Of a stretch of 64,000 nt of DNA, positions 34,157 through 62,989 are shown one piece after another; the stretch's first letter is position 1; every line of letters starts with the position of its first letter. The stretch is from contig NC_067401.1 of assembly GCF_016432865.1 (NCBI RefSeq), positions 348,812,001 to 348,876,000 of the forward strand. The letters are read 5' to 3'. The position numbers and the translations under genes are program-made. The notes under the pieces were generated by a model that was given only the letters and a program-made list of their open reading frames with translations, did no database searches and was not told where the DNA came from. Origin of the DNA: Antechinus flavipes. Lineage: Eukaryota.

Positions 34157-34335
34157 GGAAGTTTGGCGAGCATTAGTAGCACTTGTACAGAAGTGGGCAG
34201 TTTTGACAATGCTAATGTCACTGGAGAAATACTATTTGCCCTTCAGTATGACTTTAAGGTTTCCACATTAGAAATCTGCATCCAAGCCTGTAGGAACCTA
34301 GCCTTTGGAGAAGAAAAGAAGAAAAAATGCAATCC
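34157..34335 (+). CDS. SYTL3: SYTL3 exon, start of C2A (GSLASISSTCTEVGSFDNANVTGEILFALQYDFKVSTLEICIQACRNLAFGEEKKKKCNP)
   Basis: ttctag acceptor and gtaagt donor; 179 nt, phase 0 to 2; classic Slp C2A start (NVTGEI.FA..Y, LEICI.AC.NLA.GEEKKKKCNP). Confidence 0.96.
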
Positions 34336-37782: not shown

Positions 37783-37885
37783 CTATATAAAGACCTATCT
37801 GCTACCTGATAAGGGCTCTCAGGCCAAGAGGAAGACAAGTATCAAAAAGAACACTGTGAATCCTCTCTTTCATGAGACTCTGAAG
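37783..37885 (+). CDS. SYTL3: SYTL3 C2A exon (YIKTYLLPDKGSQAKRKTSIKKNTVNPLFHETLK)
   Basis: Pyrimidine tract with cccag acceptor and gtacag donor; 103 nt, phase 2 to 0; C2 core motif Y.KTYLLPD and polybasic KRKT..KK.T.NP.F.ETLK. Confidence 0.96.
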
Positions 37886-40705: not shown

Positions 40706-40876
40706 TACCCTGTGGAGTATTCCCAGCTGCAGACCCGGCTGCTCCAGGTCTCCGTGTGGCACTTAGGAACGCTCACCAGGAAAGTGTTTCTGGGAGAAGT
40801 TTTGATTCCTCTGGCTTCTTGGAACTTTGAAGATAGTGTATCCCATTCATTCCACTGGTATCAGCTCAAAGCTAAG
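40706..40876 (+). CDS. SYTL3: SYTL3 last C2A exon (YPVEYSQLQTRLLQVSVWHLGTLTRKVFLGEVLIPLASWNFEDSVSHSFHWYQLKAK)
   Basis: ttttcag acceptor and gtgatc donor; 171 nt, phase 0 to 0; QVSVWHLGTL.R.VFLGEV.IPLA.W.FED is diagnostic of SYTL3. This is the last intact SYTL3 exon found. Confidence 0.96.
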
Positions 40877-43449
40877 GTGATCCTTGGGTTCAATGGGGTT
40901 TTTGTCATGTGGTAGAAAGAAAAAAAAAAAACAACAACAATTCCTCAGAGGGTCTGGGGGATGAAAAATATTACTGGGAAGTAATGGGGTCTCAATCACT
41001 CTGCTTTCATGGAAGGCTTAATTGGCCATGACTCTAATTTAAAGCAAGATTACGCTAAAATTGTCAGTATATGAAAAATTTACAATGAGCAAACTTTGTG
41101 ATTTTTGAAAATTTGTTGCCAAGGTTTTGTTTAAACAACTAAATATCTTTTTAGGTTTCTTAAAAAAACAAAACAAAAACCACCTCAGTGTAACACACAC
41201 ACACAAGAGATCTGGCCCAGCTCCTCAGGAGAGAGTGAGCTATGACAGATAATGAAAGGGGGCCCATTCAACAAGAGTGTTATTTTTTTTTTCTTTAATT
41301 ATTTGATTAAGAAACTGTGGGAGACTAAAGGATCTCTACCCCACTGATACCCACGTGTTTCCTGTCAAAGACTTCCTTTTGGCACCTTACTCAATTTCCT
41401 GAACCTCCTTCCAAATTTCAGTTGAAGTTAGTCAGTATTGGCTGCTGATAATCACCCCACCCTTCCCTGAAATTCCTAATGTCCACATTGGAATCACAGA
41501 TCTGAGAAGGCCTTGAGGTGCTAATCAATCCACCCCTCTCCCGCTGACGTAAAGATAATGCACTATTGATTCTACTTGATTGTTATAATTGCAAGTTCAA
41601 ACCCAAACCTAAAACAATAACTTTAAAGTAAGGAATCAAATGATATTTAGAGCAAATAATTTTTAGAAAACTTAACCAACTCTACAATATTGATCTGGGG
41701 AGGTAATCATTTTCAAATCAGCTTTGTAGTGGGAAAAACTGTTTATCCCTAGGGATTTGGATTTACAGATGAGGAAATTAAGGCAGAGTTAATGACTTGC
41801 AAAGGATCACACACCCAGCATATGTCTAAAGAGTGTTTGAATTCATACTTTCTCGACTCTAAGTCTAATATGGTAAGTTCCAAACAGTATCAACCAAAAA
41901 TTAAATACCTTAACAGGGAGCAAATAACTTCTTCCCAGCGCTCAAGTTATTTCAAAGTCAATTGTGTTTAGTTAGATTATCCACTGGTTAGAACATTGGT
42001 AAATATTAACACCAAAATAAAAGAAAGGATAAAGAGGAGAGGCTCCTGCTTCTGATCGCAAATAGTGACCATCACCACTTCAAAGGGAGTAGAATTCGTT
42101 AAGCCAGGAGCTTCTAAGGTGTCCATGGCATTTTTCTGGACAAGGGTGCTAAGAGAGCCAATTAAACACAGGCTAAACTCACAAAGCCCTGGCAAGGGAC
42201 AGAAGAGGCATCAAAGTGAGCAAATATATTACTCATAGCTCATAAAGGGCAGAGGAAAAGGAATGTTTTTCATGCAAAGATGTAAAACTTGCACAATTTG
42301 GATCAGTTAGAAAGGTCACCTGGGAAAACCCTTTAGAGCCACTACTGTAAGATGATACAGACCTCTCTCCCAGGTTGCTCCAACAAAGGAGGACTCCCAT
42401 AGACATGGATATACACAAAATATTAAATATAGCCCCTTCTCTCTTTGATCTTCCAGCTGATGGCACAGCACCCCCAAGGCATTTCTCTTGCATGTATCAC
42501 TAAGCAAGTTGTTTCTTGCCTTCCAGAATAAAAGAGGTCTGGCTTTAGAGACATGGGCCATAGAGTAGAGTCATGGCCTTAGAAGGAAGGATGGGAATGC
42601 TTCTTATTTTGCAGAAGAAGGTCAGTTCCCAAAATATTTTTCATCCTTTATTCCTATTGTAAACTTAAAAAGATACCCAACCCTCAATTATTTAAATCTT
42701 GAAGAGGAGGTGCTTTGGAGAAGTCAAAAGGCATATTCATAAGTGGCCGGTCTTGCAGTCAGGAAGACCTGAATTCAATCCAGCCTTGATACAAATTAGT
42801 TGTGTGACCATGGATAAGTCACCTAAACCCTGAGGGCCCTGGACAACTCTTTAAGACTCCAAATTGCAGATGGATTACTAATCTGGGAGTTTCCTCATTG
42901 ATGAATTTTGCTGGTCTGTACTAAAAAAAAAAAACCCAAAAAAAAAACAAAAACAAAAAAAAAAAAAACAACTAGAACTTAGGGAGTGAGGATGAGGAGA
43001 TGAAGAATTGGGTCAAACACAGAGGCAGCTGCATCTTAGGCATGTATAGCCTAAGCTCTAAATCTGTTTGCACCCCCTTTAAGCAGTCTTCCCAAAGAAA
43101 AACTAGAGGGAGCCCAGAAATGTGCCATTTTGCTATATGGCAACTGACTGGGCTCTCTTACCATTGCACAAACAAGTTTCACCTTCTAGGAAGCCATTAG
43201 GATCAAAGATTCTGTCCCTAATGACTGGGGGCTCAGGGCACAGGTGAGGTGGGGCAGCCTTTGCTCTCCTTGAATCTTGTTACACTCCTCCAGGGTAGGG
43301 CTCAGATCCAAATCACTGGGGCTCCAATCTCCACCCACTCCTTCGCTTTCTTGCTCCAGGACAGAATCACTGCCAGAGCTTCATAAATCCAGAGCACACC
43401 TTTAATTATCTGGACTGGTTCTGATTCATGTAGTGCTTTTCTTTCCCTC

Positions 43450-44160
43450 TCTTTCACAGAATCAAAGAACTGCAGAATCTCAGAGTTGGAAGAGATCTCG
43501 GAAGCCATCTAGTGCAACTTTTACCTAAAGAACATCCTCTCAAAATACAAACTGCAAGTGTTTGTCCCGCCTTGCTTGAAGTGCTCCAGGGATGGAGGGA
43601 GCCATTCCACCAAGATCTCCCCCCTCAATCCCAGCCATTTCTACCTTGATATTGTGCTGTTGGCTGGGAATTTTTTCCCTAACATCAAGCCTAAATCAGG
43701 CTTTCTGCATCTTGTGTCCAGTGTCTATAATTCTGCTCTTTCAGGTCAAATAGGACAAGTAACAGCCTTCTGATCCTCAAAGATAGCTACCACGTCTTCC
43801 CTGCCCTCTCTGGTTAAACATTTCTGGATCCTCCAAATGACCTTTATGTGTATGGTCTTACTGCCTTTCATCATCCTGGTTATTCTCTTCTGGATGCACC
43901 TGTTAATGTCCTTAAAATGTATGGCCCCCAAATGAACACAGTGTTCCCAGGAGGGGCTGAACAGGACAGAGTCCATATGATCACATTTGCTTTTTTTGGC
44001 TGCAGTATCATACTGTTGATGTATATTGACCTTGCAGCCTATCAAGTCCTACCTCCCCCCAAGTCTTTTTCTGATAAACTACTATCTCCTACCTTATCCT
44101 TGTAAATGATATATTTTTTAAAATCCATAGTACACATTTGTTCTTGTTCAGTTTCATCTT
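43450..44160 (-). mobile_element. L3/CR1 LINE 3' fragment
   Basis: ORF 43746-44045 (SVLFSPSWEHCVHLGAIHFKDINRCIQKRITRMMKG) matches CR1 ORF2 [21 protein letters not shown]...QRRATRM. Confidence 0.85.
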
Positions 44161-47100
44161 AATACGATCCACACTTTTGTTCTCAACACTGACTCAATCG
44201 GTGGGCATCTCAGATTTCTTTCCACACCCCCTGGAGTAGTTTCTAGCACCATGTCATCTTGATAGTTAGCATCTAAAGAATGTCCTGATGCTTCTAAATA
44301 CACAACTCCACCACCACAAAAGTGCCAGCAATTTTCTCCTAGCCCAACCCCTGATGTACAGCTGTTCTGCCTTCCAATATGAGTGATGAGCCTGGAGAGA
44401 AGTTTTGGGGAGAGTCTTCAAGAGTAATCAAATTCATGGCTAATCCCACATTCTTGCTTTGGCCATCAATCCCTTTCATTCACCAACAATTCCATCAGCA
44501 CTGGAAAAATGTTAACATTATTGTTTTGATCTAATCTTTCTCTTTGACCCTTTGTTCCTTCTACCAGAGCGGCTACATAGCTACAGCATGGCAGATATTA
44601 GGTAGTTAGAAGAGAAATTGGAGAACTGGATAATCTATAAGCTCTATTTGTGTTTTGAGTAATCAAGATTTGACTTTTCTTTTGATGAGGGAGGGGAAGG
44701 AGTACTACCCTTCTTCTAAACAAAGATACTGGTAGCAAGGTAAATCAAACTGGCATTTTTTCTCCCCACCCAGAATTTTATGATCCTGGGCCGGTAGTCA
44801 GGTGGCAATTTCCAAAGCTGATTAAAACATTGGCAAACATGATCCAGTAGCACTGGGCAAGGACAGTCATCTTAAAGCAGCCAAGCATGTCAGCTATAGT
44901 CATGAATTTCTTTCAAGCAATAAATACCTAATGAAAGTCCTTTAGTCAATATTTCTCAAGGACCTGTGAAATATTAGAGGAACTCAAAAGGTACATCACA
45001 TACTAATTATGTATGTATTTTAATGTGCCAAATCTCTCTTATTGCCCTGTCAAGCAATAAGCTTAGAGAGCCTTATCCTCAAACTGATCAAAAAGTACTA
45101 GTTTTATTATAAAGAAAACAACTTTGAAAGACATGACAACTCTGATGCAACAGCTAAAAGTCTAGAAGACAAATGATGCAAATCATCCACCACTTGACAG
45201 AGAGATGAAAGACTCAAGATGGCAAATAGACATATTTTTGGACCCAGCCAACTTAAGAATTTGTTTGCTTGATTATATATTTATTATAGATGGCTTTTTT
45301 CTTTTTTCCAGGCATGGAACAGTGAAAAAAAGAAAAGGAAATAAAGAAATAAAAAGATAGAAAGAAGGAAAGAAAAAAGGAAAGAAAAGAGGGAAGGGAA
45401 AAAAAGGAAGGAAGGAAGAAAAGGGGGCCAAGAGAGATTTTTGAAAAAAATGTAGAGAAGAGAATGAAGGCCCGAACAGTACAGTTGAGCAGAACAGCTT
45501 TGAAAACCAGTCTTTACTTTTTATATACTTAAAGAAAAACAAGCTCTATACAATAGAAATCTTCAGTTTCATGTATAATCCTCTTTTTCTGTTCTATGAT
45601 GTGTTTAGAAATGCCCATTTTATTTGGTGTTAAGTTCAGAATAAAAGTCTACCCTTTCATCTACGAAGTCTTTTTGAATACCAGTTGTAAAATTGTTTCT
45701 TCCTCAGCTGATCATTCTAAATGCCTCTTCCACATTCATCATGTTCTAATTTATAATGTGCATATCATAGTTTCTCTACTAGTTTATAAGCTCACTCCTT
45801 GAGAGGAGATATCTTATTTATTTCTATATCCTTTTCCCTTTCTCGGCATAGTACCTTGCATATAATAATCATTTAAGAAGCAGGACAAGGCCACAAGTGT
45901 TTATTAAGCACTATATTCTGTAACTGGCATTATGCAAAGCACTGGGAATACAAATATTAGGGAAATGAAAGATAGTTCCTGCCCTCAAGAAATTTTCATT
46001 CTAATGGGAAAAGACAATACACAAAAGGGAGTTAAATGAAAAGGGGATTGGAGGAATGAAGGTTAACTAGAGTTTTGAAGTCCAGAAAGTCAAAAGCATG
46101 GTTGGGAGGAAAATGAAGGTTGACCAATCAAGACCCTTCTTCAAAATGGAGGTCCTGATATGGACCCCAGCCTTTAAAGTGGGTTCTGCATTTTCCCAAA
46201 TTGATCACTAACTGACTGACTGATGGAATGAATGAATACCCCCTCACTGACCACCAGAAAGAAAATGGCTTTTATCAATAAACAGTGCTGTAGATCTGGG
46301 ATTCAAATTGGTTCCTTTGTGAACAGTGAGAAAGATTCATGCTCTTCTAACTCTATAAGATGGCAGGAGTCTAAAGGGACTTGCTTTTTAGCTAACACTT
46401 GGCAAGGAGACTTTTGACCCAAGGTGGGGTACTTCCTCCCAGAGAGGGGGAGGGCACACTTGCTTCCTATCACAACTGCATTTCTTCTCTGTATTGACTC
46501 AACCATGTTGATCCTAATCAGTGCCTTGCCTCCTGTTCTTCTACTGACCTGTGCTGCTGGGAAGCCCCTATATCCTCCTACTGCAAGCGGAGACAACATA
46601 TATGGAGGAATAGTGGTCAAGTAAAAGTTATTTGATTTGGGAAAGCACAGGGATGATCAGTGGAACAAATGGACACTTTATTAAAAGCCCTTTCTAGAAG
46701 GGAGTGTTGATTTGATTACAGTTTTCAGAGCAAGAGATGGAAATGTGGATGGAAGAAAGGAGAGAACAGAGCAAAAGATGACTGGAATTCAGAAACATGG
46801 TCCCGGGGAGTTCAAAGCTGAAAGGCTGAGCAGGTGGAGGGGCAGGGTCTCTGGAAGCCCATTTTGGAGTACAGTGGTAGGGTGGCAGGTCATGGTAGGA
46901 GACAGCAGGAGGGAAGAGTCTCCCCTTTTTCTGGCATGACTGAATCCATAACACTGCCCCTGTACCCCAACTGTTCCTTTGTCCTGGGTAAAAAAGTAGC
47001 TAGTATAACTAGAGGTAGGGCTTCATCTACTTCTGGCTATCACAATTTCCCACTTCTAATTGAAGTCATTACTTAAAGTAGACAAATTCTGTTGAGGGAA

Positions 47101-47464
47101 AGGAGTAAGGAAGGTCACATATCCTCCAAAAATAGGAAAGGAATATGATAGGCAAAGAACCCACTTCCCCATTTTATTTAGTTTTATCTTTAGTTTCCCA
47201 GTTTAGATAGTTTCCTTTCTTCCTCCTTAACCTTTTTGCTCTCTATCCCTTACTTGGGACCTCCTTGGCTTGCTTATAAATGCATTCAAGGCGGTCCTAT
47301 TCATGGTTTGTGATCTGATGGCTTAAATGTGGGGCCATGGAGTAGGCTCATGGATCAAGGTTTCCAGGAATATTCTTAGATGTTAAGGAGGAAGGACAGG
47401 ATGCTGCTTATTTGTTAGGAAAAGGTCAACCTGTTTCTTAATTGCTGGAATTCTGCCCTCATTT

Positions 47465-48015
47465 CTTTTCTTTTTTAAAATTTTATTTTAATAACATAAT
47501 TTTTTCCAATTACATGTAAAGATAGTTTTTCATTTTTGTATGATTTTGAGTTCTTTTTCCCTTCTTCCTTTACCTCTTCCCTCCCCAAGATAGCAAGCAA
47601 TCTGATATGTTATACATAAACAATTGGACTAAACATATTTCCATATTAGTCATGTTGTGAAAGAAAAATCAGGATAAAAGGGGAAAATTACAAGAAAAAA
47701 ATAGTATACTTTGATCTGCATTCAGTCTACATAGTTCCTTCTCCAGATGTGGATGGCATTTTCTAGCCCAAGTCTATTGGAATCATCTTGGATCATTGTA
47801 TCACCGAGAAGAGCTAAGTAAATCATAGCTGGTCATCATACAATCTTGCTGTTACTGCGTACAGTGTTTTCCTGGTTCTGCTCACTTTACTCAGTATCAG
47901 TTTATTTAAGCCTTCCCAAGTTTTTCTCATCAGCCTTTTCATCACTTCTTATAAAACAATAGTATACCATTACATTCATATATCATAACTTATTTAGCCA
48001 TTCCTCAATTTCTAA
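47465..48015 (-). mobile_element. L1 3' fragment
   Basis: Same 3'UTR and ORF2-end motifs as the 9985 and 22190 copies. Confidence 0.85.
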
Positions 48016-48907
48016 TTGAGACTTGCAAGTACCTGAGTTCATGAATACAATTTAATAAACATTGTTTTTTGTTTTAAGGCAGCATATTATTTATTGTGGG
48101 AAAAGAATCAAATCTGAAATTGGAGACCCTTTAATATTAATATTAATAATGATAAATCTGCTATTTACTACTTCTGGTAATTTAGTCATCACTTTGTCTC
48201 TTCACTCTTCAGTTTTCTTGTTACCAAAAAGAGTTGATGATAGCTAGTGATGATGAGTATATCTTTTCAGTACTAAATATGCAAGGTACTAAAGTGGACC
48301 TGGGGTTCCAAAATGACAAATAATAAAAATAGCTAAAATCATAGCACTTGAAGTTTTACAAAGCACTTTACATGTATTATTTCACTTTATCCTCTAGCCC
48401 ACTTGGAAGTAAGTACAGTTCTTATTCCCATTTTACAGATGAAGAAACAGACAGATAGTCATTTAATGACTTGTCCAGAGTCATGCAGTCAGTGTTTGAA
48501 ACTATATTTGAATTCAAGTCTTCCTGACTCCTGGTTCAGTGTGTTACCCACCATGCCCCCAGCTGCTCTCAAAGATGTGGTTCTTACTTTTGAAACATTT
48601 AGACTCTGCCAGGAGAGTTGTCATATGTTCTAATCAATAGATTATAGAATATGATAATTGAGTTTGGATCTTTCAGAGGAAGAGATTGTTCTTAGGCAGA
48701 GGTCCCAGAGAAAGCTAAATGAAAGAAGTGGCACTTGACCAGGGTCTTTAATGGAAGGGAAGGTAAATATTTTAATATAAGGGAATTTATAATGTAATAT
48801 AATATTGTGTGGCTTTATATAATGTAACATAACAAGATATGAAACATAATAATGACGTGACATGATACAATAACACAACACAGCACAATATAATACAATA
48901 CAATTTA

Positions 48908-49110
48908 AGGCAGTCAAGTGGTACAGTGGAGAGAGTGCTGGTCCTAGAATCAGAAAGACTCATCTTCATGAGTTCAAATCTGGTCATTTCACCTGGTTTG
49001 CCTCAGTTTCCTCCTCTGTAAAATGAGCTGAATGGCAAACCATTCCAGTATCTGCTAAGAAAACCCTATAATGAAGAGTCAGACATTACTGAAAATAACT
49101 AAACAACAAA
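48908..49110 (+). mobile_element. Mar1-type CORE-SINE
   Basis: aggcagtcaagtggtacagtggagagagtgctgg head and actgaaaataactaaacaacaa tail. Confidence 0.78.
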
Positions 49111-49309
49111 AATACTATGAAATAATATGTGAATTTCAAAAGATAAATGGGGTAGGGTGCAGGAAACAGGTACAGGGAGGACCGTGCTGGATGCAAATCC
49201 CATGGGCTTTAAAGAACTAATTATTAAATTTTCTCTGTGAGCTTTTACATCTCAGAAATTTATCACAATTATTTATGTTGGATTGTATCATTTATTTATT
49301 TTGTTAGGC

Positions 49310-52140
49310 ATTTTCCAATGACATTTTCAAAATTTTATTTATTTAAAACTTAAATACAAAATAGAAAACAAAAAACCCCACCACTGTCATGTGCACAGCA
49401 GAATATTAGAAAGGATTCAAAATATACAGCAATAAATTTCCATTTCAAGAAATCCTGTATAATAAATACTACACAATTGTATTCAGAGTCTTTTCTTTGC
49501 TTCCATATAAGTTTTCTTTTGTTCTCTGATGTGTACTTTTTTCCTTTATTCTACCTCCTCCCAAAAGGCTACAATTAAGCATGCATATGTTTATACATAC
49601 ACACATGTACATTAATATACACATGTGGACATGTATAAAAATATTGTATATAGATATCTATGATCATATATACACATTCATATACACCTATGTAAGACCA
49701 TGCTATGTTTGTCCTCTGTTTCTCTGAAGGTTCCTTTTCCTTTGTAAATTCAAGTCCTTCCATATTTTTCTAAATCCACAAATTCATAGTTTCCTACATC
49801 ATAGTAATATTTCGATGTTATACTCTCTAGTTATTTTAAATAGTCTAAACATATTGATTAATATGGTTGACATATAGTGTAACCTCCCTATTTTTCTCTT
49901 TTGATTAAAATACATTTTAGCTTTGTCTGAGATCATGCTTATTACTCCCGCTTTTTTTAACCTAATAAATTGCACTCCTGATCTTTATTATGTTTCTGTG
50001 TATTTCTTATTTCCTATCCCTCATGATCCCTCTGCTTTACTTCTACCAACTATTAATCCACTCCCTCTCCAAGGATCTCTCCCTTATCCTCTCAGCCCAC
50101 TCTTTCCCTTTGCCTTATTGTTTTTATCTGAATTTAGAATACTTTTATAGCCTTCCAAGTATATGTGTTGTTCCTTCTTTATCCTATTCCCATTAATCTA
50201 TACACTTTTCTATGCTTCTGTCTTATCCTATTCTTTCACCTTCTTATTTCTTTATAAATTTAAAAGACTTTTATTCCCTTTAAAATGTATGTGTTGTTCT
50301 CTCTTTAACCCTGTTTCTTTTCTCTCTTGAAGCCTCATCCTCTCCCATCCCCTTAACATCATATTTTTTCTGAATTTAGAAGACTTTTACACACATCTGT
50401 GTAAATATATATGTACTGTATGTTATTGTATATATGTATTGTATGTTATATATGTTAGTACATACACATATGTATTGTTTCCTCTTTTAATCCATTCCTT
50501 AGGAGTAGAATTTCAGAACTACCAGCTCTCCTCCTTCTAATTCTTGTGTGCCAGTTGTTCCTCTTGCACCTCATTTGTATAATTAATCTTTTTAGCTTTT
50601 TCTGCAGTAATACTTTTTAGAAACACATTATATTCAGCTCTGTCCCAATCTTTCTTTAGAACTATGTAATTCCTAATAACAATCTTAGACTTACAGTTTA
50701 TATTTCCACATTTAAAAAGTAAACAGTTTATTTTGAGTCTTTGATATTTAGCTTATATTTCTCTTTGATTTTATGTGCCAAATTTTCTGTTAAGTTCAGG
50801 TGTTTTTGCAACAAAATCTTGAAAATCTGACAATTCATTGAAAGTCCTTTTTTCCCTTCAGATTATGTTTAACTGCTGGGTATAATATTTTTAACCATGA
50901 CATTAATTCTTTTGCTTCTCAATATATAGTGTTTTCAGACCTGTGTTGTTTTAGTGTTGTAATGTTAGATTTTGTGTGATTCTAAATATGGCTCCACTAT
51001 ATTTAAATTTTTTTTCCTTGTTGCTTGAAATATTTTCTCCCTGAGCTGTGGTTTCAGAATTTGGCTATGATATTCTTGTAGGTTTTCTTTGTAAGAATTT
51101 TTTTTGGTAGTGACTATTGGATTTTTTTTCTGTTTCTATTTTCCCCCTCTTATTCTAACTCTTCAGGACAATTTAAAAAATTATTTCTTATATTATTGTA
51201 TCAAGATTCTTTTTTTGATCACAGTTCTCAGGTAATCTGATTATTCTTATGTTTTTTCCTTCTTGATCTGTTTTCCAGATCAGTTATTCTTCTTCTTAGA
51301 TGCTTTACATTCTGTTCTATTTTTTTCATTCTTTATATTAAAAAAATATTTATTGGTCTCTTAACTTCATTGGCTTCCCCTTGCCCAATTCCAATTTTCA
51401 AGGAGTTGTTTTCTTCCTTAAGACTTTGGATCTCTTTTTCCAGTTACTTGTCTTTCTTTTTATAATTTTCTTATTTTTCTTGGATTGTATTTAATTTTTT
51501 AAAAATGCATTTGATTTTTAAAGTCTTTTTGAAATTCTTCTATGAACTTCTTTGAGCAGGTGATCATTTGATGTTACTCTTTGGAGTATGAGACACTTTT
51601 CTTACTTCAGTATCCTCCTCTGAAGATGAATCCTCATCTTTATTCACATAATAACTTTCAAAGGTTGGGGTTTTTCTCCTTTGCTTATTATTATTTTTTT
51701 AAATAGGAGCTTGTTATTGTAATTACCTCTGGTCCTGAGGTATGGGGGATAGTGTCATTCTTCAGTTCTCTTCAGGCTGCAACAGGAACTGACAACTCAA
51801 CCCTCCTGTACGTGCCCACAGAAGCATCTGTGCCTCACATACTGTAAGTATGTGCTGGTTCCTTCTTGCCCGAAGCAGTATCTCAGTAGCACTTATCAGC
51901 AGTCCCTTATCAGCAGAGGTTTCCCCAATTTTCCTCTCAGAAGAGGGACTCCCCACATTGTTTACAAAGTGAAAATTCCCGTGACTGCCGTAGAAGCTAC
52001 CTCCTAACCCAGCTAGCTCCAGGGCTATGAACTAGCCTGGAGCTAGTCAGGAGTTCACATTGGCCAAATCTCTGTTCTGTAATTTTTCTTTGGATCTTCT
52101 CAGTCCCAGGAATACTACTGTCCTACCCTAACTCTTGTTT
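49310..52140 (-). mobile_element. Old L1 remnant (3' end, ORF1 region, 5'UTR)
   Basis: T-rich degenerate similarity to the ORF1 region at 23700-24430 (ttggctatgatattcttgtagg, ttcttgatctgttttccagatcagtt); GC-richer 5'UTR-like end. Confidence 0.7.
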
Positions 52141-55100
52141 ATTTTACATGTCATTATACAGTAAATTGAATGCAAGTCCTCCTGATTTTGAGTCCAATAT
52201 AGTGTGAGATAAAGCGAAAAGGCATTGGACTCATTTTGTTGAGGACCTTGAATGTTATGGGGAATCAAGATGAATAAATCAATAGATTGACAAATAGATG
52301 GATGTATAGAGATCAGTAGGACATTTCCTATGTCCTAGGAAATGTGTATTGTTAAGAATACAAATACAAACCAAAAGAAACAGTTCCTGCCTTCGAAGAA
52401 CTTATATTCTAGAGAGTGAAGAAACACATAAAAAGGGAGTTGAATATTTTTTTAAATAGGGGAGGGAAGAAAGAGTGGAACAAAGAATGAAGGAGACCCT
52501 TCCTCGTGGAGCTGTTTGACCTAAGTCATGAGACCAGAGGGAGTGATGCCCTGAAAGGTCTTGTGTCAACCATTGCTCTGATAGGAATTCTAGGTCTCTG
52601 CTTTATTATCTGTAAAATGAAAGCTTTAACAGTTTGTGAGTCTATGACATTCAAGGTCTATTAGAACTTCATGGAAGCTCAGGCTTACTTGATAAGAGTT
52701 GGATGAGCCTTCCTTTGTGCCTTTCTGTGGGATCTCCGTTTCCTTCTCTGTAAAACCAAGGAGGCAGACTAGAAGCAGCCAGTGAATAGAGAATTAGTCT
52801 CAGAATCGCAGACTAGAAGCAGCCAGTGAATAGAAAGAACATTAGGCTCAGAGTCAGGAATCTGGCTTCAGAAACTTGCTAGTTATGTAGTCTTAGATAA
52901 ATCATTTAATCTCTATCTGTCTCAGTTGCCTCGTCATAAAAATAGAGATAATACTAACCTACCTCCCAGGGTTTTTGTAAGGATAAAATGAGATAATATT
53001 TGTAAAGCATCATAGAAATGCTAGCTACTATTATTATTAAATGATCTCTCAAATCCCTTTCAGGTCTAACATACTTTGAGGTTTTGGTGGGGTGGGGTTA
53101 GTTTCAAGAAACTGGTTGCTATAAACATTTATATACTATTCCCTAGTAATCAGGGATGTGTGAAAACACAATTAATTATTCCTGATAACTAGCTATTTAG
53201 AGCTGTTTAAATAGGAAGCTAATAGCCCTCTTCCTCTGCTTAGGAGGACAGAGGTGGGCAGCATCCCTAACAATGACCTTGTCTCTGACCCCATGCATGA
53301 GTTTCTCCTCCTCCCCTCTCCTGACTGTTCATCTGTGATGTTTGCTCCAGATATAAAAATGCTGATTTACTACTCTGTCAAAAATGGAGTGGTCAATCCA
53401 ATTACACAAGTATCCTAGCATAGGAGCACTTAGCAGCACTTAAAAAGCCAACAGGAAATTTTTTTGATCGATTTGAAATGAAACCTCTGAAGGATCCAGA
53501 CAAGATAGAGTAGGTAGGGAGAGACCAATGTGGACCACCATGTCCAGGAAGGCTTCCCGGAAGGTAGACCTCAGACTGGAGCCCTTGAGGGTGGGCAAGG
53601 GCTGGAGAGAGCTCAGCAGGGAGGAGAAAAGCTGAGTGCTCCTGGTGCCAGAGATCCTGAATTGACAGATACCAATCACACTTTAGTCTGAGTCACCCGG
53701 AGAAGTTTTTAGCCTCAGCCTGGAATGATGAGTGTGGGGAGTGCAGAAAGCAGAAGTGTGTGTGTAGGGGTCCAAAGCCCCTTCCTCCATACTTTTGAGG
53801 AACAGCATCGCCTTTGGGGACCCTTCTGTTCTTCTCCTGGAAAGCCAGCTGAACTTTTTGGAAACCATAAATCCAGGCTTATTTCAAAGGCAGGAAATTA
53901 CTGAGTGGCAAGTGAATTGTGCCCTCCCAGAAAGGACCATGGTGCCATTTAGTCCAGTCTATACCTTCCCAAGAATTCCTCTATCATAGACCCAGCAAGT
54001 GATCATAAAATCTCTGCCAAGGAAACACTTTGGGAGCACTCTCCTAGTCGGTGATTTTCCCCTTCTGTCAAACCCCAATCTTCCCAGTGCTTTCCATCCC
54101 TTCTCTCCGGCTCTCTTTTTTAAGGTCTAGCAGACATGTCTAAGCCCTCTTTTCCAAGTTTGTCGTTCAGTCACAGCTGTGTCTTCACGACCCCATTTGG
54201 GGTTTTCTAAGCAAAGGTACCGGAAATACTACCTTCTGAGGCAAACAGGGCTAAATGACTTGCTCAAACACATGAGGCTGGATTTAAATGCAAGAAGATG
54301 AGTTTTCCTTACTCCAGACCCAGCACTCTATCCACTGTACCTCAAACTGCTCAAACGACAGCCCTTTAAATGCTTTCAGGTAACTACCATAATTTGAGCA
54401 AATTGCTTGGAGAATACATATATATACACACACATGCACATACTGCTTGTGTCCTGTGCCATCTGAGATAATATATACACATTTATAAATGTGTGTATAT
54501 ATAGAAATATTTGTGTTTATACGTGTGTGTATATATATATATACACATACATATACACCCAAAATATATATGTATATGTACACACACATAAATNNNNNNN
54601 NNNNNNNNNNNNNNNNNNNNNNNNNNNNNNNNNNNNNNNNNNNNNNNNNNNNNNNNNNNNNNNNNNNNNNNNNNNNNNNNNNNNNNNNNNNNNNNNNNNN
54701 NNNNNNNNNNNNNNNNNNNNNNNNNNNNNNNNNNNNNNNNNNNNNNNNNNNCTATTTGGTTAAAATGATTTACTCATAAGAAGGGGAAGAAAGCTTTTGT
54801 TCTGGTCAGAATTTCAATTAATTGAATTTTTTTTTTCAAGTTTTACTAAGTGGAGGTTTCCTCTTGTTGCACTTACTGGAAACTTTCTTTTTTGTAGTTT
54901 GGGGGAGGAGGGAGGAACCTTTTTGTCTGTGACTTAAACAAAGATGGGCAGTTGGGGCTTTATCACTGGTTGCTGCCCTAAGTCCCCAAGTGGCTGGGAT
55001 TTTAAAATTTCACTTACAGATAACTCTTTTTGTAGCAAAGCTGAAAAAGAGTTTTATTTTAGTCCATGAATGCAATCCTAATGGAACATGAAAAAGAAAT

Positions 55101-55797
55101 AAAATGATGTTACAGGTTCTTAATGAATTCTAATTGTAAAGGCACAACTGCCTTTTCCTTCCCCTAATTAATGCCTATATTAATTTAAACATTTTTCACC
55201 TTTAGATTCAACAATTTCAAGATCAAGATTTACTGGTAGATATTGAACTTTTAAAATAAAAATGTGATTCTTAGTTTTCCCATTTACAGATAACTCTTAA
55301 TGGTTTCAAAGTTAGATGAAGAATTTTGAGGAAGAGTCAGATGATAAAAGTATCTCTCTTTACTTTGAAATATCTTTTATTAAAAACAAGAAAGGTTTGC
55401 TCTTCCTTGGGTTAAGTGCACAGGCTATGGAGTGGAAGGATAGAACTTTGGAGATCTCTTCCTGCCTAAGGATTCTACAGTGATCAATGGCATGAATTAT
55501 ATAATCTCAAGGTCTGGGTTATGAGGAGGACTAAGGGGGCAAAATAAGGGAAATTTGATCAGGTTAGACCAGTAATGCTGGCTGACAATGTGCAAGGTAG
55601 CGGTGAAGGGCCCTGAGTAATGGCAGGCTCTTGCAGCTAGCTAAGGGCTTCTGCTATTGTTAGAACCAGAAGAGCTCAAAGCTCACTCGAAACTCATATG
55701 ATAGCCAGGATTTTAAAGACCTTTCTGAGTCTTTCTTACTGCTTGTCTCTTAAAGCCTCTTGAGAAGTAGGGATCGCTACTATATTGTAGATAGTGT

Positions 55798-55990
55798 CAG
55801 GGGTCCTAAAACTATGGGCCTGTGGGCCAGATGTAGCAGCTGAGGACATTTATCCCCCTCATCCAGGGCTATGAAGTTTTTTTATTTAAAGGTCCACAAA
55901 ACAAAGTTTTTGTTTTTACTATAGTCCGGCCCTCCAACAGTCTGAGGGACAGTGAACTGGCCCCCTATTTAAAAAGTTTGAGGATCCCTA
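55798..55990 (+). mobile_element. Non-autonomous hAT MITE, OC1-like, 193 bp
   Basis: TIRs CAGGGGTCCTAAAACT and AGTTTGAGGATCCCTA (13/16 complementary); a 43-nt stretch is identical to the 30281 copy; 8-bp TSD not clearly preserved. Confidence 0.85.
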
Positions 55991-56211
55991 GTAGGTATTC
56001 AATAACTGTTCAATTGAATGGAAGATACCTATTAGCCAAGGAGCTTCATTATTGGTGAAGTTTTCTCTATTGTTCTGGATTTGGGAATACAAGAACTCTG
56101 ACAATGTTCAAATCTGCCCCTTTTATAATTTTTATTTTTTAATGTATTTGTTTATTTATAATTTGTTTTTCTCTTGCAATGAATAGGTTCTATTTGGTCA
56201 GTCCGGCCTTC

Positions 56212-56317
56212 CTCCTGAAATTGGAAGACAGAGACCTCTCAAGTCATAGAGATCAGCAGCTAGAATCTTGTATCACCACGAATGTCAGTCACGGCAATAT
56301 TCTGCATCCTCTTGAAG
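56212..56317 (+). pseudogene. SYTL3: Probable decayed SYTL3 C2A-C2B linker exon (AEKYEDSVPQSNGEL-type)
   Basis: AAATTGGAAGACAGAGACCTCTCAAGTCATAGAGAT resembles the recalled human AAATACGAAGACAGCGTTCCTCAGAGTAATGGAGAG. It ends in GAAG at the expected distance, but there is no AG at the expected acceptor and ttcatg sits where the GT donor should be. Confidence 0.45.
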
Positions 56318-57157
56318 TTCATGTATCAATGTATCTGAAATACATGCTAGCAATGAGACTATGGAGAATTCACAGAAATTCAATGGAATAAGGAAGTCTC
56401 CCTCTTAGCTTTGATGAGGAAGAGAGGTAAGGGAATGGCCTTGTATGAGCAAAATTTGGGTTTTTGCCTCAGTTTGTGGCTAAGCCCTGTCCTAGGAGGT
56501 CACTCATTCTCAAAAAAAACTTCAACAACTTCCCTCTAGGGTTATCTATAAACTCCAGCTAACTTTTTAAAGCCCTTCCCAATCTATTTCTTTATCTCTA
56601 GCCTCATTTTCATTACTTTCCCCAAGAAGAAACACTATTCGTTTCAAGGGAGCTCAGGAAAGATGGTACCTATTTAACATTTTGAAGGAAGGAGGGTTTC
56701 AGTGAAAAAGGAATGCATTTTACCTTGCTCTCTGTCCTCCACACACTACACCATCTCTAGTTTTGAAATCACTAGTCTTCTGTCCCAAATTAACTTGTCT
56801 TCATATCTATTTTGTACATATCTAAAATATGCTGTTTCCTATTAGAATGAAAACTCTTTGAGAGTAGGGATGGATTGATTCCTTGTATTTTATCCTTGGT
56901 ACCTGAGACAAAGCAGCTACCCAATAAATGCTCGTTGACTGGCTGAATATTTTGATAAGTGTGGCCCAGTACTTTCGCAAGCATTCCCTCCCCTCCCAGG
57001 CTTGCCTTGACAGTAAAATTAATGATACTTGGCATTCCATCCCATGCACCCTGGGCAAGGTTGATTATCTCCAAAGCTGAAGTAAAAACATCAACCGTAA
57101 ATGCTGAATTGTCAAATCCCAACGGCAAGATCTCCTTGGTTAGCTCTGCTCCAGCAG

Positions 57158-57267
57158 GGCGCCCTGTGGGAGGGTAATGAACAGCTCAGAAGGAACCAGA
57201 CTGAAGCATGTGTCCAGAGAGCCAAATGGATCTTTAATCTCCCATGAAAGAGAATTTGTCTCTAAGG
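57158..57267 (+). pseudogene. SYTL3: Possible decayed first C2B exon (GQL...GAKNL...PDGTLNSFVKG-type)
   Basis: ctccagcag acceptor-like sequence, then fragments EQLR / GTR / PNGSLIS / FV.K in the expected order. It needs indels to align and has no GT donor (aagg|ataaat). Confidence 0.35.
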
Positions 57268-57533
57268 ATAAATCTAGATTAGGACGGGAGGTCGAGTAAC
57301 AGGTTTAATGAGATCACATTATAGTCCCTTGCTGAACACAAGTTCTGTAAGATTTTCATTCTAGTTCACATGGCTCGACAACCTCTTTCATAATGGACTT
57401 AGTAATATATTTAAATGTTTCCTGTTTTGCAATAAGGAACAACTGCCTACACATAGGACTAGGGAGGGGAGGCGGCTTGATCCCCTGTTATATCTTAGCA
57501 CTGAGTGTTTGATGGTTTCCCTGACACCATCAG

Positions 57534-57780
57534 TTGCCTTGTTGGGGTGGGGAGTGGGGCTGGAGGAAAAATCGTCTCATCCTTCAACACCAAAAAAATT
57601 AAAACTGAAATATCCAGTTGTGAAAAAGTAAATCTGCCCACATTGGGCAGAGACACTTCTTTGTTCTCAATGGCGTGACCCACTTCTTAGCTGAAGCAAT
57701 GGATGAACTATCTGGGATACACCATGTTGGGATTATTTCAGTGTAAATGAATCTTTTTGAAAGGATCAAAATATGAATAC
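57534..57780 (+). pseudogene. SYTL3: Decayed main C2B exon of SYTL3
   Basis: Reads RLILQHQK/LKLKYPVVKK*ICPHW/HFFVLNGVT/S*LKQ/TIWD...FSVNE/FLKGSK against human CLTLPDQQKLRLKSPVLRKQACPQWKHSFVFSGVTPAQLRQSSLELTVWD...FGMND.LLGGTR. TAA at 57629-57631 and TAG at 57688-57690 both fall at Gln positions; several frameshifts. Confidence 0.88.
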
Positions 57781-59114
57781 TTCACACAGCTTAAGCAAGA
57801 ATGTCCTCTCCTTGTTACTGTCCATAACTACATTTAAAAAAAAAATCTTTCAACCTTTCTGAGACTGTTTTTTCATCTGTGAAATAAAATAATGGTATTT
57901 AGTAGGGCTTTCTGAGGGTCAAATTAGATAATGTAAAATATAAAGCACTTTGCAAATCTTAAAGATGTCATTATTAGTAACAATAATAATAATTTAAAAA
58001 ATACTTCCTCAATAGTAGGTTACTTAATTTGCTTCTAGGGTATTTAGAAATGGTTATTGCAAAGCTTAATACCTATTACTAAGGGATAATACATTAAGGT
58101 ATTTAAACAATTTAAATTACTCTAATCTTCTAAAGGAAAAAAATCTTAATATTGAAAAACCCCAAACCAACTCTGATCTAACTTTGAGCTAAAATATTGG
58201 CTTTTTGTTTTAGCGGCTGGCTATTAAAGGATTACTTTAAAAAAAAAAAAGAAAAAGAATCCACTCCTTTTTTCAACTCAAATAAAACAAAGATAGCCTA
58301 GATAAATGTCATTAAATGGAAATTAAAATCTACTTTTTAAAAAAGAAAGCTATTCCATAGAAGTATGTGTCCTCCTATTAAAGGAAATGGTCCCAATTTA
58401 CATTCAGCCTCAGGGTCTCCCGTTTCTTCTTCCCTTCTCCTCTTCATGAAGAATCAACCAATGCACTAACATTTTTGTTCTTCTCCTTTCCTATCAACTT
58501 TTTTTGTATGTAATGAGTCACCTAAACCTTGAGCTTCTTTTATGGAGAAGTGATTGCTAAAGACTCAGTACTGAATTTGGGAGTCCTTCCTATTCCTTAA
58601 TGTAAGTAGTTAATGCCTGCATATGTGATACTTCAAATGAAACTTTTCTTGGACAAGACCTATTATTTTATTGGTATACAGAAATAGTGAGGAAACTCCT
58701 TCTACTGATGTAGATCTGCTGATACTGGAGGAGTCATACATAGAGAGCTGGCAAGGATTGTAGAGCCCACAAAATCCAACTCTCCCATTTTACAGATGGG
58801 GAAACTGAGGCCCAGAGAAGGAAAGTTATAGGATTGTGGATTTGTAGCTAGAAGGGATCACCAAAATCATGGGCCCATCTCCCACCATTTTTCAAATAAG
58901 TGACATGCCCAGCAAATGACAGAGTTAGAGACTTGAACCCATATTTTTTTGACTCTGGGGTCAGCTCTCTATCCACCAACACCATACTGCTTTTTAGCTA
59001 TATAACTTCATAATGATCAAGAAAGGTTCACTGGAAAAAGGCTAAAAGGAAAATAAAATTAAACCTTTCTCGCCACATTCTGCCAATATCAACTTTTTTT
59101 TCTTCAAAATTTAG

Positions 59115-59232
59115 AATCAGGCAGCTGGGGGGAAAGGGGGGGGGAGGAGAGGCTTAGACTTATTCTCACAATCAAAATTTATGTCCAAAAGTTCTTTCCA
59201 TGTCAAAATTATGGACAATGATATTAAAGTAA
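59115..59232 (+). pseudogene. SYTL3: Decayed terminal coding exon of SYTL3
   Basis: tttag acceptor; SQSK then frameshift, then KVLSMSKLWTMILK* (59188-59232) against human SQSKLQWQKVLSSPNLWTDMTLVLH*. G-run expansion at the 5' end. Confidence 0.8.
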
Positions 59233-60612
59233 ACCACCACTTGGTAAAGACAAATACATTTATTTTTTTAAAAAAACCTGGGGATTGCATTCTTGCAAGA
59301 AGCTAAAAGTCAGGTGCATCCCCAAAATTCCAAGTGGCAGCATAATACCTCTCAACACATTTACTTTCTCAAGTATAAATGTGAAAAATCACCAACTCCT
59401 GCTGCAGGAGAGGAACTAATTTTCATAATCTTTTTTTGTAAATATTTAACTTAAGCCGGCCAGTCACTGTTGAGAGTGAAAAGAATGCTATCATAGAAAT
59501 AAGGTTCAAGTCACTGACCTCTTCTTCACAGGCAAGATGCTTACTTACCCTGTAGTAGTAAAAAGCCCATTGGGAAGTAGTTCAATTATCACTAAGTGTC
59601 CACAAAACATTCTGTGATGTCACTAGTAATATGTCCAAATACATAAAATGACAGACGCCCAAGGTAATTTTTATTATGAACATTTGGAGGGAAATTTTTT
59701 TTTCTGAATATTTAATTTATAGTTCTGCACCATGGATGTTTTTTTGTAGGGGAAATTTTTCTTACTCTTTGTCCCCAAACATCATTAAGCACTGATGAGC
59801 CATTCATTTTCACTTTCAAGTTCATGTAATGTTAATAACATATGCTGTCCAGAAATGCACTACAGCTGGTCTCCTGTCCTATTTTCTGAATCTGCATTAC
59901 AGCAGAACCAATTACATATTTTAAATAATTAATAATAACTAGCTTTTATATAGTCCTTACTAGTGCCAAACACTTTTTAGTTATTATCTCATTTGCTCTT
60001 CACAACCACCTTGGGAGGTAAGAACTGTTAATATCCCCATTTTACAGATGAGAAAAACCGAGGCAAACAGAGTTAAATTGATTTGTCCAGGATCACAGCA
60101 TCAGCAAGTGTCTAATGTTGCACTGGAACTCAAGTTTTCCTGATTCTTGGTCAAGCACTCTATCCATTGTACCCACCTAGCTGCTGCCCCCTAATAATAA
60201 TCATAATTTTAAAGAGTGCAAATTCAAAGATATGTGATTATATCTGGGGATTCATTATTTCACTATTTTACTAATTGAGACTTAGTTATAATTAACAGCT
60301 AGACAAATGTGAAATGGGCAAGCTCAGGAAGCAATGGGTCACCCATCACTGGAGGCAAGGATTGAGGAAATCCTTTGTTGGGTGGCTAGCAGAAGGAAGT
60401 CTTTTGTAGTACAGGCGGGATGAGATGGTCATTGAGTGGATGTCCCTTCCACCTCTAAAATCCCTGAGATATACACACATCACAACCTAGCTCAATCCAG
60501 TTGCTAACGGCTTCCGAGTAGTTTATGAAAACCACAGTCAATAAAAGGGATTCCCCGGCCCCCCAACATGTAATCAAACATCAAATGCTCTGCAACATCA
60601 TCTTGAAGATAT

Positions 60613-61992: not shown

Positions 61993-62157
61993 TTACATAG
62001 CTTCGAACTCATCGATTCTCTGCTTTGTATTCCCCTGTCGAATCTGCCTCAGAGTCTTGTACTTGTCGCGTCCTTGCCTCATATTCTCGTTGTGGATGAT
62101 GTCGTTGTGGGTTCTCTTATTCTCATCTCTGGCTTGGGACAGCTCATTTGTCAATGT
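61993..62157 (-). CDS. EZR: Ezrin, last coding exon (C-ERMAD / actin-binding tail): [54 protein letters not shown]
   Basis: Minus-strand tgtttcag acceptor, 54 codons plus TAA. Near-identical to the ezrin C-terminus including the KYKTLR regulatory threonine motif; SYTL3-EZR tail-to-tail synteny. Not in the ORF track because it has no ATG start. Confidence 0.97.
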
Positions 62158-62989
62158 CTGAAACATTAAGGAACATAGTTAGATAAATGACACGTCAGGA
62201 ATTTAATGACAGCTATGACGGATACCCATGAGAGGCTCTGATGTCTGTAAAACATCTCATTTGGAAACAAAACAAAACAAAACAAAATCTCGTTTGGAGT
62301 TCTGCAAGTGAGCTATAAGCTGGGTCCCATTTGGGGTTCTCTTGACAAAGATGGCTTGCCATTCCCTTCTCCAGCTCATTTTACAGAGAGGGAAACTGAG
62401 GCAATTAAGATTAAGTGGCTCAGCCAGAGTCACACAGCTAGTAGGTATCAAAGGAAGGATTTGAATTTAGGAAAATGAGTCTTTCTGGCCCTCTATAGGA
62501 TTTATAACCCTCATTTCAGAGGTGAAGAAGTGAGGTTAAGAGCTTGCCTGGGGGCCATATAGCTAATGGCAAACAAAGTGTTCCAGACCCCAACATATAG
62601 TGCCAATGATGTGTCTCATTTATGAAATTTTTATTTTCAGTCCCCTATGACATTATTTCATATGGCATCAGATAGAGGCCATATTGATTTTGGAGAATTG
62701 TTTCCTTCTCCTTTTTTTTTTTCTTTCCTCTGTTTAAAAATAATTTTACTTTTTAAAAAAAAGTTTCTCTTACTTGCTTTGTTTGTAAAAAACTTAAAGT
62801 TTTTTATTTTTATTTTTTACTTATGAAAATATTATGAAAAAATTTAAAAATTATGAAAATTTATAAATTTCATGAATTTTGTTTTCAGTCCCTTCTTTTA
62901 TTTATCTTATTTTTAAATTAATTTAATTTTAATAAAAATTAATTTTATAATTTAATTTTAATTAAAATTTAATTTAAAAATTTTAATTT

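What the first reader, a model, noticed from the sequence alone, without database searches (positions are those of the whole stretch)
40706..59232. SYTL3 appears to have lost its C2B domain while keeping an intact C2A: a candidate single-C2 Slp3
Seen in sequence: eight consecutive exons (905 nt) splice into one stop-free frame through the end of C2A. The syntenic C2B and terminal exons just before EZR carry nonsense codons, frameshifts and lost splice sites. Established: Slp proteins are Rab27 effectors with an N-terminal SHD and tandem C2A/C2B; Slp3 C2A is the atypical Ca2+/phospholipid-binding module, and its loop-1 EE and polybasic strand are retained here (GEEKKKK, KRK). Inference: the sharp contrast between clean upstream exons and heavily decayed downstream ones suggests selection kept an SHD-linker-C2A protein after C2B was released, giving a lineage-specific architecture. 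A recent whole-gene loss would not easily give this asymmetry.
Basis: partly seen in the sequence, partly recalled or inferred. Interest (0 to 1): 0.88.

Follow-up and report, generated by a model that had tools for sequence, protein, structure and literature searches.

The report
Marsupial SYTL3 lacks its C2B domain
This marsupial copy of the vesicle-docking gene SYTL3 has an intact Rab27-binding part and first C2 domain, but its second C2 domain has decayed and been replaced by a short 22-residue tail, a change shared by every marsupial gene model examined and not discussed in the papers I could search.

Summary
Eight + strand exons (905 nt, all AG/GT) splice into one open frame through the end of C2A.

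It encodes 22 residues plus TAA. The nine exons together give residues 133-455 of the 455-aa RefSeq SYTL3 of Antechinus flavipes, with 100% identity.

Downstream, on gap-free sequence, two C2B-region exons survive only as wrecks:
- The main C2B exon (57567-57811) has two in-path stops and about six frameshifts.
- The old last exon (59122-59237) has three frameshifts and has lost its stop codon.

The linker exon and first C2B exon cannot be detected. The gap at 54594-54751 lies 11 kb beyond the stop codon. It touches no exon or remnant and does not affect the conclusion.

The architecture is not specific to this species. NCBI-annotated SYTL3 models from eight marsupial species in four orders end with the same-length 22-aa tail. 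Eutherians, birds and reptiles keep about 610-aa proteins with two C2 domains. SHD-linker-C2A is 88-91% identical between American and Australian marsupials, at least as conserved as in eutherians. So the retained part is a functional gene, not a pseudogene.

Monotreme models also lack the body of C2B, apparently by an independent event.

The short form is implicit in public annotation, but no paper in the searchable library discusses it.

The parts
2610..2661 (+). SYTL3 coding exon (residues ~133-149 of the 455-aa protein; first SYTL3 exon in the window)
   Evidence: AG acceptor, GT donor; 100% match to P0267
4172..4238 (+). SYTL3 coding exon (linker, ...SKISVVPPTPPP...)
5975..6047 (+). SYTL3 coding exon (linker, ELGQLKGFNKSMENLF...)
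16474..16598 (+). SYTL3 coding exon (linker, ISKSQNDMTSDK...)
27575..27709 (+). SYTL3 coding exon (linker)
34157..34335 (+). C2A exon 1, with the loop GEEKKKKCNP
   Evidence: invariant in alignments A1 and A2
37783..37885 (+). C2A exon 2, with the polybasic KRKT strand
40706..40876 (+). C2A exon 3, the last strands of the domain, ending WYQLKAK in phase 0
   Evidence: in the AF2 model the strands run up to residue 429
43460..43528 (+). Marsupial-specific terminal coding exon: 22 aa (NQRTAESQSWKRSRKPSSATFT) plus TAA, with a canonical polypyrimidine/AG acceptor
   Evidence: a tail of the same length in 8 marsupial species; no Pfam match; no copy elsewhere in the window
43529..44940 (+). Probable 3'UTR. 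The first poly(A) signals after the stop are ATTAAA at 44821 and AATAAA at 44919. The extent is inferred.
   Evidence: no transcript data available
54594..54751 (.). Assembly gap (158 N) in the former SYTL3 3' region, outside the present coding sequence. Its left flank is a TA/CA-rich simple repeat.
57567..57811 (+). Pseudo-exon, the remnant of the main C2B exon: stops TAA at 57629 and TAG at 57688, and about six frameshifts
59122..59237 (+). Pseudo-exon, the remnant of the ancestral last SYTL3 exon (...SQSK...LWT...H): three frameshifts, stop codon lost
61993..62166 (-). Last coding exon of EZR (ERM_C domain), tail-to-tail with SYTL3. This is the synteny anchor.
   Evidence: ORF; Pfam ERM_C, E 4.6e-28

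Best explanation
The window holds the 3' two-thirds of the marsupial orthologue of SYTL3 (Slp3), from Antechinus flavipes or a very close relative. In the marsupial stem lineage the gene stopped using its four 3' exons (the C2A-C2B linker and C2B). It now terminates in a new exon 2.6 kb downstream of the last C2A exon. That exon adds a 22-residue basic, Ser/Thr-rich tail that AF2 predicts with low confidence, consistent with disorder.

The abandoned C2B exons then decayed neutrally. Only the two best-conserved ones are still recognisable, and both are full of stops and frameshifts.

The product is SHD, a long disordered linker, one complete C2A and the tail. It has been kept under purifying selection ever since.

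Inferred mechanism: it still acts as a Rab27 effector. It binds Rab27-GTP on secretory granules through the SHD and binds acidic phospholipids through C2A alone. The Slp3-specific GEEKKKK loop and the KRK polybasic strand of C2A are invariant. So whatever C2B contributes in eutherians is dispensable in marsupials or is provided in some other way.
For: Shown:
- Nine canonical exons give a product 100% identical to residues 133-455 of XP_051853977.1 (P0267).
- Pfam finds FYVE_2/SHD and a single full-length C2 in the marsupial proteins, against two C2 stretches in cat.
- AF2 gives a confident eight-strand C2A (pLDDT about 80-93) and a tail below 50.
- The main and last C2B exons are broken, on gap-free sequence, collinear with and just upstream of the EZR 3' end.
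- NCBI-annotated models from Gracilinanus, Monodelphis, koala, Petaurus, Antechinus, Sminthopsis, Sarcophilus and Macrotis end with a 22-aa tail of identical length. Positions N1, R3, W10, K15, S17 and T22 are invariant. No marsupial SYTL3 with C2B appears among the top hits of a search that admitted proteins of 250-796 aa.
- The retained part is 88-91% identical between didelphids and Australian marsupials (SHD 91-95%, C2A 86-90%). Eutherian pairs show 80-87%.

Established knowledge: Slp proteins bind Rab27 through the SHD and bind phospholipids through their C2 domains (PMC5084650; PMC10369986). SYTL3 phospholipid binding needs Ca2+ (PMC12656530, citing Fukuda 2002).
Against: - No transcript data could be reached, so use of the 43460-43528 exon rests on gene models and cross-species conservation.
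- dN/dS could not be computed, because no marsupial DNA other than this window was obtainable.
- The tail is only about 59% identical between didelphids and dasyurids, so constraint on it is modest.
- Two of the four ancestral 3' exons are undetectable, and one could lie in the gap.
- Rab27 and lipid binding by the marsupial protein are inferred, not tested.
- Ensembl models for opossum and wombat propose other tails, for example intron read-through.
Confidence: 0.85

Rival explanations
1. The C2B-less gene is real, but the 22-aa terminal exon is an annotation artefact. The true transcript would end by read-through of the donor at 40877 (adding VILGFNGVFVMW and a stop at about 40913) or in some other 3' exon.
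For: Ensembl models for Monodelphis (P0270) and Vombatus (P0375, P0372) carry read-through or other tails. No transcript evidence was available here. A read-through frame of 12 codons exists.
Against: The 43460-43528 exon has a strong polypyrimidine/AG acceptor. It is in phase with exon 8. It keeps exactly 22 codons and six invariant residues in eight species of four orders. Neutral intronic sequence would not be expected to do that over a divergence of about 80 My (the date is from my own knowledge).
Confidence: 0.08
2. An intact C2B exists but is hidden, either in the 158-N gap, in misassembled sequence, or at another locus, so the protein is really a normal tandem-C2 Slp3.
For: The linker exon and first C2B exon were not found, and there is a gap at 54594-54751.
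Against: The main and last C2B exons are present and broken on contiguous sequence downstream of the gap. A gap estimated at 158 nt could not hold a whole C2B. Independent assemblies of at least nine marsupial species yield only single-C2 models.
Confidence: 0.03
3. The whole gene is a pseudogene in slow decay, and the upstream exons merely look clean.
For: Half of a domain pair has been lost. No expression data are at hand.
Against: There are no lesions in nine exons, and all splice sites are canonical. The RefSeq model has a complete SHD. Identity across the deepest marsupial split is 88-91%, equal to or above eutherian SYTL3. By contrast, the really abandoned exons are only just recognisable, with about one frameshift or stop every 10-13 codons.
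Confidence: 0.03

Closest known systems
Eutherian and sauropsid SYTL3 / Slp3-a (about 610-620 aa)
   Same: It is the orthologue. It has the same SHD, linker and C2A (67-71% identity to human over residues 1-433), the same GEEKKKK loop and KRK strand, the same exon boundaries through C2A, and the same tail-to-tail synteny with EZR.
   Different: It lacks C2B entirely. It ends 22 residues after C2A in a marsupial-only exon, and the ancestral 3' exons are pseudo-exons.
Slac2 proteins (melanophilin, Slac2-b, MyRIP) and Noc2: SHD-containing Rab27 effectors without C2 domains
   Same: They have an SHD but do not have the canonical tandem C2 pair.
   Different: They have no C2 domain at all and are separate paralogues. 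The marsupial protein keeps a complete C2A, so it is an intermediate architecture reached by domain loss within the SYTL3 orthologue. The Slac2 description is from my own knowledge of the family.
Monotreme SYTL3 models (platypus XP_039767073 547 aa and XP_028908159 513 aa; echidna 518, 513 and 445 aa)
   Same: They also lack the body of C2B while keeping the SHD, linker and a full C2A.
   Different: They retain the ancestral linker exon and the first C2B exon (...CLVTLGARNVPTRS...LNS) and then stop after KG+GGTS or in an unrelated tail. The break point and the tail differ from those of marsupials, so this looks like a separate event. It rests on gene models only; no DNA was inspected.
Eutherian exon-skipping isoforms (Odocoileus X2 569 aa, Tupaia X3 528 aa)
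   Same: These are predicted products that skip the main C2B exon and so lack a functional C2B.
   Different: They are minor predicted isoforms alongside a full-length form. In marsupials the short form is the only one that can be encoded.

Membership tests
SYTL3 orthology group | Closest relatives in an unbiased search are SYTL3 proteins | tested here: met
   The best named hits to the last C2A exon and to full proteins are SYTL3 across vertebrates. Paralogues (SYTL1, SYTL5) score far lower.
SYTL3 orthology group | Conserved synteny: 3' end facing the 3' end of EZR | tested here: met
   The last EZR exon (ERM_C, E 4.6e-28) lies on the - strand at 61993-62166, downstream of the SYTL3 remnants. 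That eutherians have the same arrangement is from my own knowledge.
SYTL3 orthology group | Slp3-type C2A: acidic/basic GEEKKKK loop and KRK polybasic strand | tested here: met
   Present at 34307 and 37826. GEEKKKKCNPY and the K-K-T residues of the KRKT strand are invariant in A1 (13 sequences). In A2 (28 sequences) G333, K336, K337, K339, K357, K359 and T360 stay invariant, and E334, E335 and K338 are at least 90% conserved.
Slp family as defined by architecture (SHD + tandem C2A/C2B) | N-terminal Slp homology domain (Rab27-binding) | tested here: met
   Pfam FYVE_2 covers residues 10-123 of P0267 (E 2e-18). These exons lie upstream of the window, so this rests on the RefSeq model, which is identical to the window over residues 133-455.
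Slp family as defined by architecture (SHD + tandem C2A/C2B) | C2A domain | tested here: met
   Pfam C2 covers 319-430, positions 2-104 of 104. AF2 gives an eight-strand sandwich with pLDDT about 80-93.
Slp family as defined by architecture (SHD + tandem C2A/C2B) | Second C2 domain (C2B) | tested here: not met
   Marsupial proteins have a single C2 stretch against two in cat. The genomic C2B exons are broken or undetectable.
Slp family as defined by architecture (SHD + tandem C2A/C2B) | Binding to GTP-Rab27A/B and to phospholipids | not testable with these tools
   This needs pull-down and liposome assays with the marsupial protein.
Slac2 (SHD proteins lacking C2 domains) | No C2 domain | tested here: not met
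   A complete C2A is present.

The most novel reading that the evidence does not exclude
Two of the three living mammalian lineages, marsupials and monotremes, independently discarded the C2B domain of Slp3 while keeping SHD-linker-C2A under strong purifying selection. Marsupials replaced C2B with a newly recruited terminal exon encoding a conserved basic Ser/Thr-rich tail. This would make Slp3 a Rab27 effector whose core, conserved function needs only one C2 domain. It would also make eutherian C2B a lineage-retained accessory module.
Probability: 0.45. Interest if true: 0.6.

Novelty: new variant of a known kind. Interest (0 to 1): 0.5.

Why it matters
The Slp family is defined by an SHD plus tandem C2 domains, and the specific role of Slp3's C2B is poorly understood. 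Marsupials offer a natural form lacking C2B that appears to date from before the split of American and Australian marsupials (roughly 80 My by my own knowledge of that date), with a probable second, independent case in monotremes. This amounts to an evolutionary deletion experiment. It argues that Rab27 binding plus a single Ca2+/phospholipid-binding C2A is enough for the selected function of Slp3, for example in granule transport and docking in lymphocytes and mast cells. It gives clear constructs to test against eutherian Slp3. It is also a clean example of domain loss through a switch of 3' terminal exon followed by neutral decay of the abandoned exons. Finally, it warns that annotating marsupial and monotreme SYTL3 as a tandem-C2 protein by homology would be wrong.

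Tried and rejected
1. Marsupial DNA for lesion dating and dN/dS. The look-up of encoding contigs returned no DNA for Gracilinanus or Petaurus ('sample's file is too large'). The platypus and echidna isoforms I queried were not on record. So there is no codon-level test and no check of which lesions are shared.

2. Transcript evidence. A search with C2A plus the tail (P0267:283-455) for short, transcript-derived proteins found no marsupial fragments.

3. Homology of the new terminal exon to the ancestral linker exon. Neither the sub-profile search nor the frameshift-aware alignment found a signal at 43460-43528. The best 'linker' scores (38 and 37, at 55680 and 45425) are at background level (33). 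The origin of the exon is unresolved. It is not a repeat within the window.

4. First C2B exon. Not detectable (score 36 against a background of 31).

5. An apparent second copy of the exon 1/2 peptide just upstream of exon 3 (5843-5893). It scores 46 against 41 for other forward positions. I treated it as a chance Pro-rich match.

6. Literature. Nothing links SYTL3 with marsupials in the searchable library. Fukuda 2002 and Kurowska 2012 are not held, so the roles of C2A and C2B in Slp3 are cited second-hand or from my own knowledge.

7. Pfam on the 186-aa ORF at 63339-63899 (-) gave nothing significant.
Full report
**What is in the window**

The window is vertebrate genomic DNA with five N runs. 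On the + strand it carries the 3' two-thirds of SYTL3. On the - strand, at 61993-62166, it carries the last coding exon of EZR (ORF; Pfam ERM_C, E 4.6e-28). The two genes lie tail to tail.

**Checking the observation: the eight exons**

The exon at the start of the finding (40706-40876) has a tttttcag acceptor and a GT donor. It encodes the last strands of a C2 domain. I searched 1.84 billion representative proteins with this exon and recovered SYTL3 proteins from many vertebrates. tBLASTn with these proteins located all upstream exons.

I then searched exhaustively for AG...GT-bounded exons whose spliced translation is contained in the closest protein, P0267. This gave a unique chain: 2610-2661, 4172-4238, 5975-6047, 16474-16598, 27575-27709, 34157-34335, 37783-37885 and 40706-40876. 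The chain also has a ninth exon, 43460-43528. The GEEKKKK and KRKT motifs are at 34307 and 37826.

Exon 9 has a ccctctctttcacag acceptor, is in phase 0 with exon 8, and encodes NQRTAESQSWKRSRKPSSATFT followed by TAA. The nine exons translate to residues 133-455 of XP_051853977.1 (SYTL3, Antechinus flavipes, 455 aa) without a single mismatch. The window therefore comes from that species or a very close relative.

The first poly(A) signals after the stop are ATTAAA at 44821 and AATAAA at 44919. This suggests a 3'UTR of about 1.3-1.4 kb.

**The C2B region**

I built a profile from the C-terminal parts (linker plus C2B) of 162 full-length orthologues and searched the six-frame translation of 40877-61900 with stops masked. 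There is one significant hit, at 57593-57787 on the + strand (i-E 1e-5).

A frameshift-tolerant protein-to-DNA alignment gives more detail:
- **Main C2B exon, 57567-57811.** It has recognisable blocks (LIL..Q, KLK.K.PV.KK..CP.W.H.FV..GVT, WD, F.V.E). It also has about six frameshifts. The score is 84-91, against at most 41 anywhere else on either strand.
- **Ancestral last exon, 59122-59237.** It shows ...DL.SQSK...KVLS...LWT D...V.H, with three frameshifts and no stop codon after the final His. The score is 63, against a background of at most 39.
- **Linker exon and first C2B exon.** Neither rises above background.

The two remnants are collinear, on the correct strand, and sit between C2A and the EZR 3' end.

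**The assembly gap**

The 158-N gap at 54594-54751 is flanked on the left by TA/CA simple sequence. It lies 11 kb downstream of the present stop codon and 2.8 kb upstream of the main remnant. No exon, remnant or open frame reaches it. Everything from 54752 to the end of the window is free of N.

The gap might hide one of the two undetected small exons. It cannot rescue C2B, because the main and last exons are broken on contiguous sequence. I did not attempt to fill the gap.

**Comparison across species**

Searches of the 5.8-billion-protein collection admitted proteins from 246 aa up to 784-796 aa. They return marsupial SYTL3 models of only 389-466 aa:
- Gracilinanus, 455 aa
- Monodelphis, 390 and 464 aa
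- Phascolarctos, 455, 431 and 389 aa
- Vombatus, 430 and 466 aa
- Petaurus, 455 and 389 aa
- Antechinus, 455 aa
- Sminthopsis, 448 aa
- Sarcophilus, 455 and 391 aa
- Macrotis, 454 aa

Eutherian, bird, turtle, crocodilian and tuatara proteins are about 606-630 aa.

The NCBI-annotated models of eight marsupial species end, after WYQLKAK, with a tail of exactly 22 residues (the Vombatus models, from Ensembl/UniProt, have other tails). N1, R3, W10, K15, S17 and T22 are invariant, and positions 11-12 are always basic. By my count, Gracilinanus and Antechinus share 13 of 22 tail residues (59%).

Pfam finds one full-length C2 in Antechinus, Gracilinanus and platypus, but two in cat.

**Is the retained part under constraint?**

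Between the American Gracilinanus and four Australian species, residues 1-433 are 88-91% identical (SHD 91-95%, linker 87-91%, C2A 86-88%). Six eutherian pairs give 80-87% overall and 86-92% for C2A. The retained part is therefore at least as constrained as in species with a full-length protein. The abandoned exons have picked up a frameshift or stop about every 10-13 codons.

An AF2 model of the Antechinus protein, built from a 28-sequence alignment, shows a confident eight-strand C2A that ends at residue 429. The linker (128-300) and the tail (437-455) have low confidence, consistent with disorder.

**Interpretation**

The simplest history is a switch of 3' terminal exon in the marsupial stem lineage. 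Either the exon at 43460 came into use first, or C2B was disabled first. Afterwards the four ancestral 3' exons drifted neutrally. Because both didelphids and Australidelphia share the tail, the event predates their split, which I recall as roughly 80 My ago.

The product keeps everything known to be needed for a Rab27 effector that reaches membranes:
- The SHD binds Rab27 (PMC5084650; PMC10369986).
- Slp3's phospholipid binding requires Ca2+ (PMC12656530, citing Fukuda 2002). That paper is not held. From my own recollection of it, the activity maps to C2A rather than C2B.

That the marsupial protein actually behaves this way is an inference. Whether the basic tail contributes to membrane binding or regulation is speculation.

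**Rival explanations**

- Whole-gene decay is contradicted by the conservation figures and the intact splice sites.
- A hidden intact C2B is contradicted by the broken exons on contiguous sequence and by independent assemblies of at least nine species.
- The main residual uncertainty is whether the 22-aa exon is the terminal exon actually used. Ensembl models in opossum and wombat use read-through tails, and I could not reach transcript data. The exon's conservation in length and phase across four orders favours it.

**Novelty**

The short proteins are already in RefSeq and UniProt, so the sequence fact is public. I found no paper that mentions SYTL3 in a marsupial context. A 2023 phylogenetic study of Slp C2A domains states that all Slp proteins contain two C2 domains (PMC10369986). 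I therefore class this as a new variant of a known kind. It is of moderate interest to specialists in Rab27 effectors and C2 domains, and as an example of domain loss by terminal-exon switching.

**Seen in passing**

Every platypus and echidna SYTL3 isoform retrieved keeps the linker and the first C2B exon. Each then ends after ...LNSL(V)KG, either with GGTS or with an unrelated tail. If the loci confirm this, C2B was disabled independently in monotremes.

**What could not be done**

- No codon-level selection tests and no dating of lesions were possible, because no other marsupial DNA was obtainable.
- No transcript evidence was available.
- No judgement on 'lost splice sites' was possible.
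- No genome-wide search for another C2B copy was possible.

Noticed in passing
Proteins P0147, P0367, P0368, P0370, P0148 (not in the window): All platypus and echidna SYTL3 isoforms retrieved (445-547 aa) keep the SHD, linker, C2A, the C2A-C2B linker and the first C2B exon. They then terminate after ...LNSL(V)KG with GGTS or an unrelated tail, so monotremes also seem to lack a functional C2B. The break point differs from the marsupial one, so this would be an independent loss.
   Followed up: partly
window 44821 and 44919: These are the first ATTAAA and AATAAA signals downstream of the SYTL3 stop codon (43526-43528).
   Followed up: partly
window 63339-63899 (- strand): A 186-aa ORF ends ...LLIREMQIKTTL. 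By my recollection it resembles the C-terminal part of LINE-1 ORF2. Pfam gave no significant match. It lies upstream of the last EZR exon, presumably in an EZR intron.
   Followed up: partly
window 5843-5893 (+ strand, just upstream of exon 5975-6047): A Pro-rich stretch (...TGVHPTPPPHAS...) in frame with exon 3 resembles the exon 1/2 peptide SKISVVPPTPPPVSES. Its score (46) is barely above other positions (41), so this is probably chance or low complexity.
   Followed up: yes
window 40877-40915: Read-through of the exon-8 donor would add only 12 codons (VILGFNGVFVMW) before a stop. Ensembl models for opossum and wombat use analogous read-through tails, so a second short 3' end is conceivable.
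   Followed up: no
window 290-1070, 20073-20219, 20230-20382, 39375-39503: Four further N runs lie in SYTL3 introns. None touches an exon of the model.
   Followed up: yes
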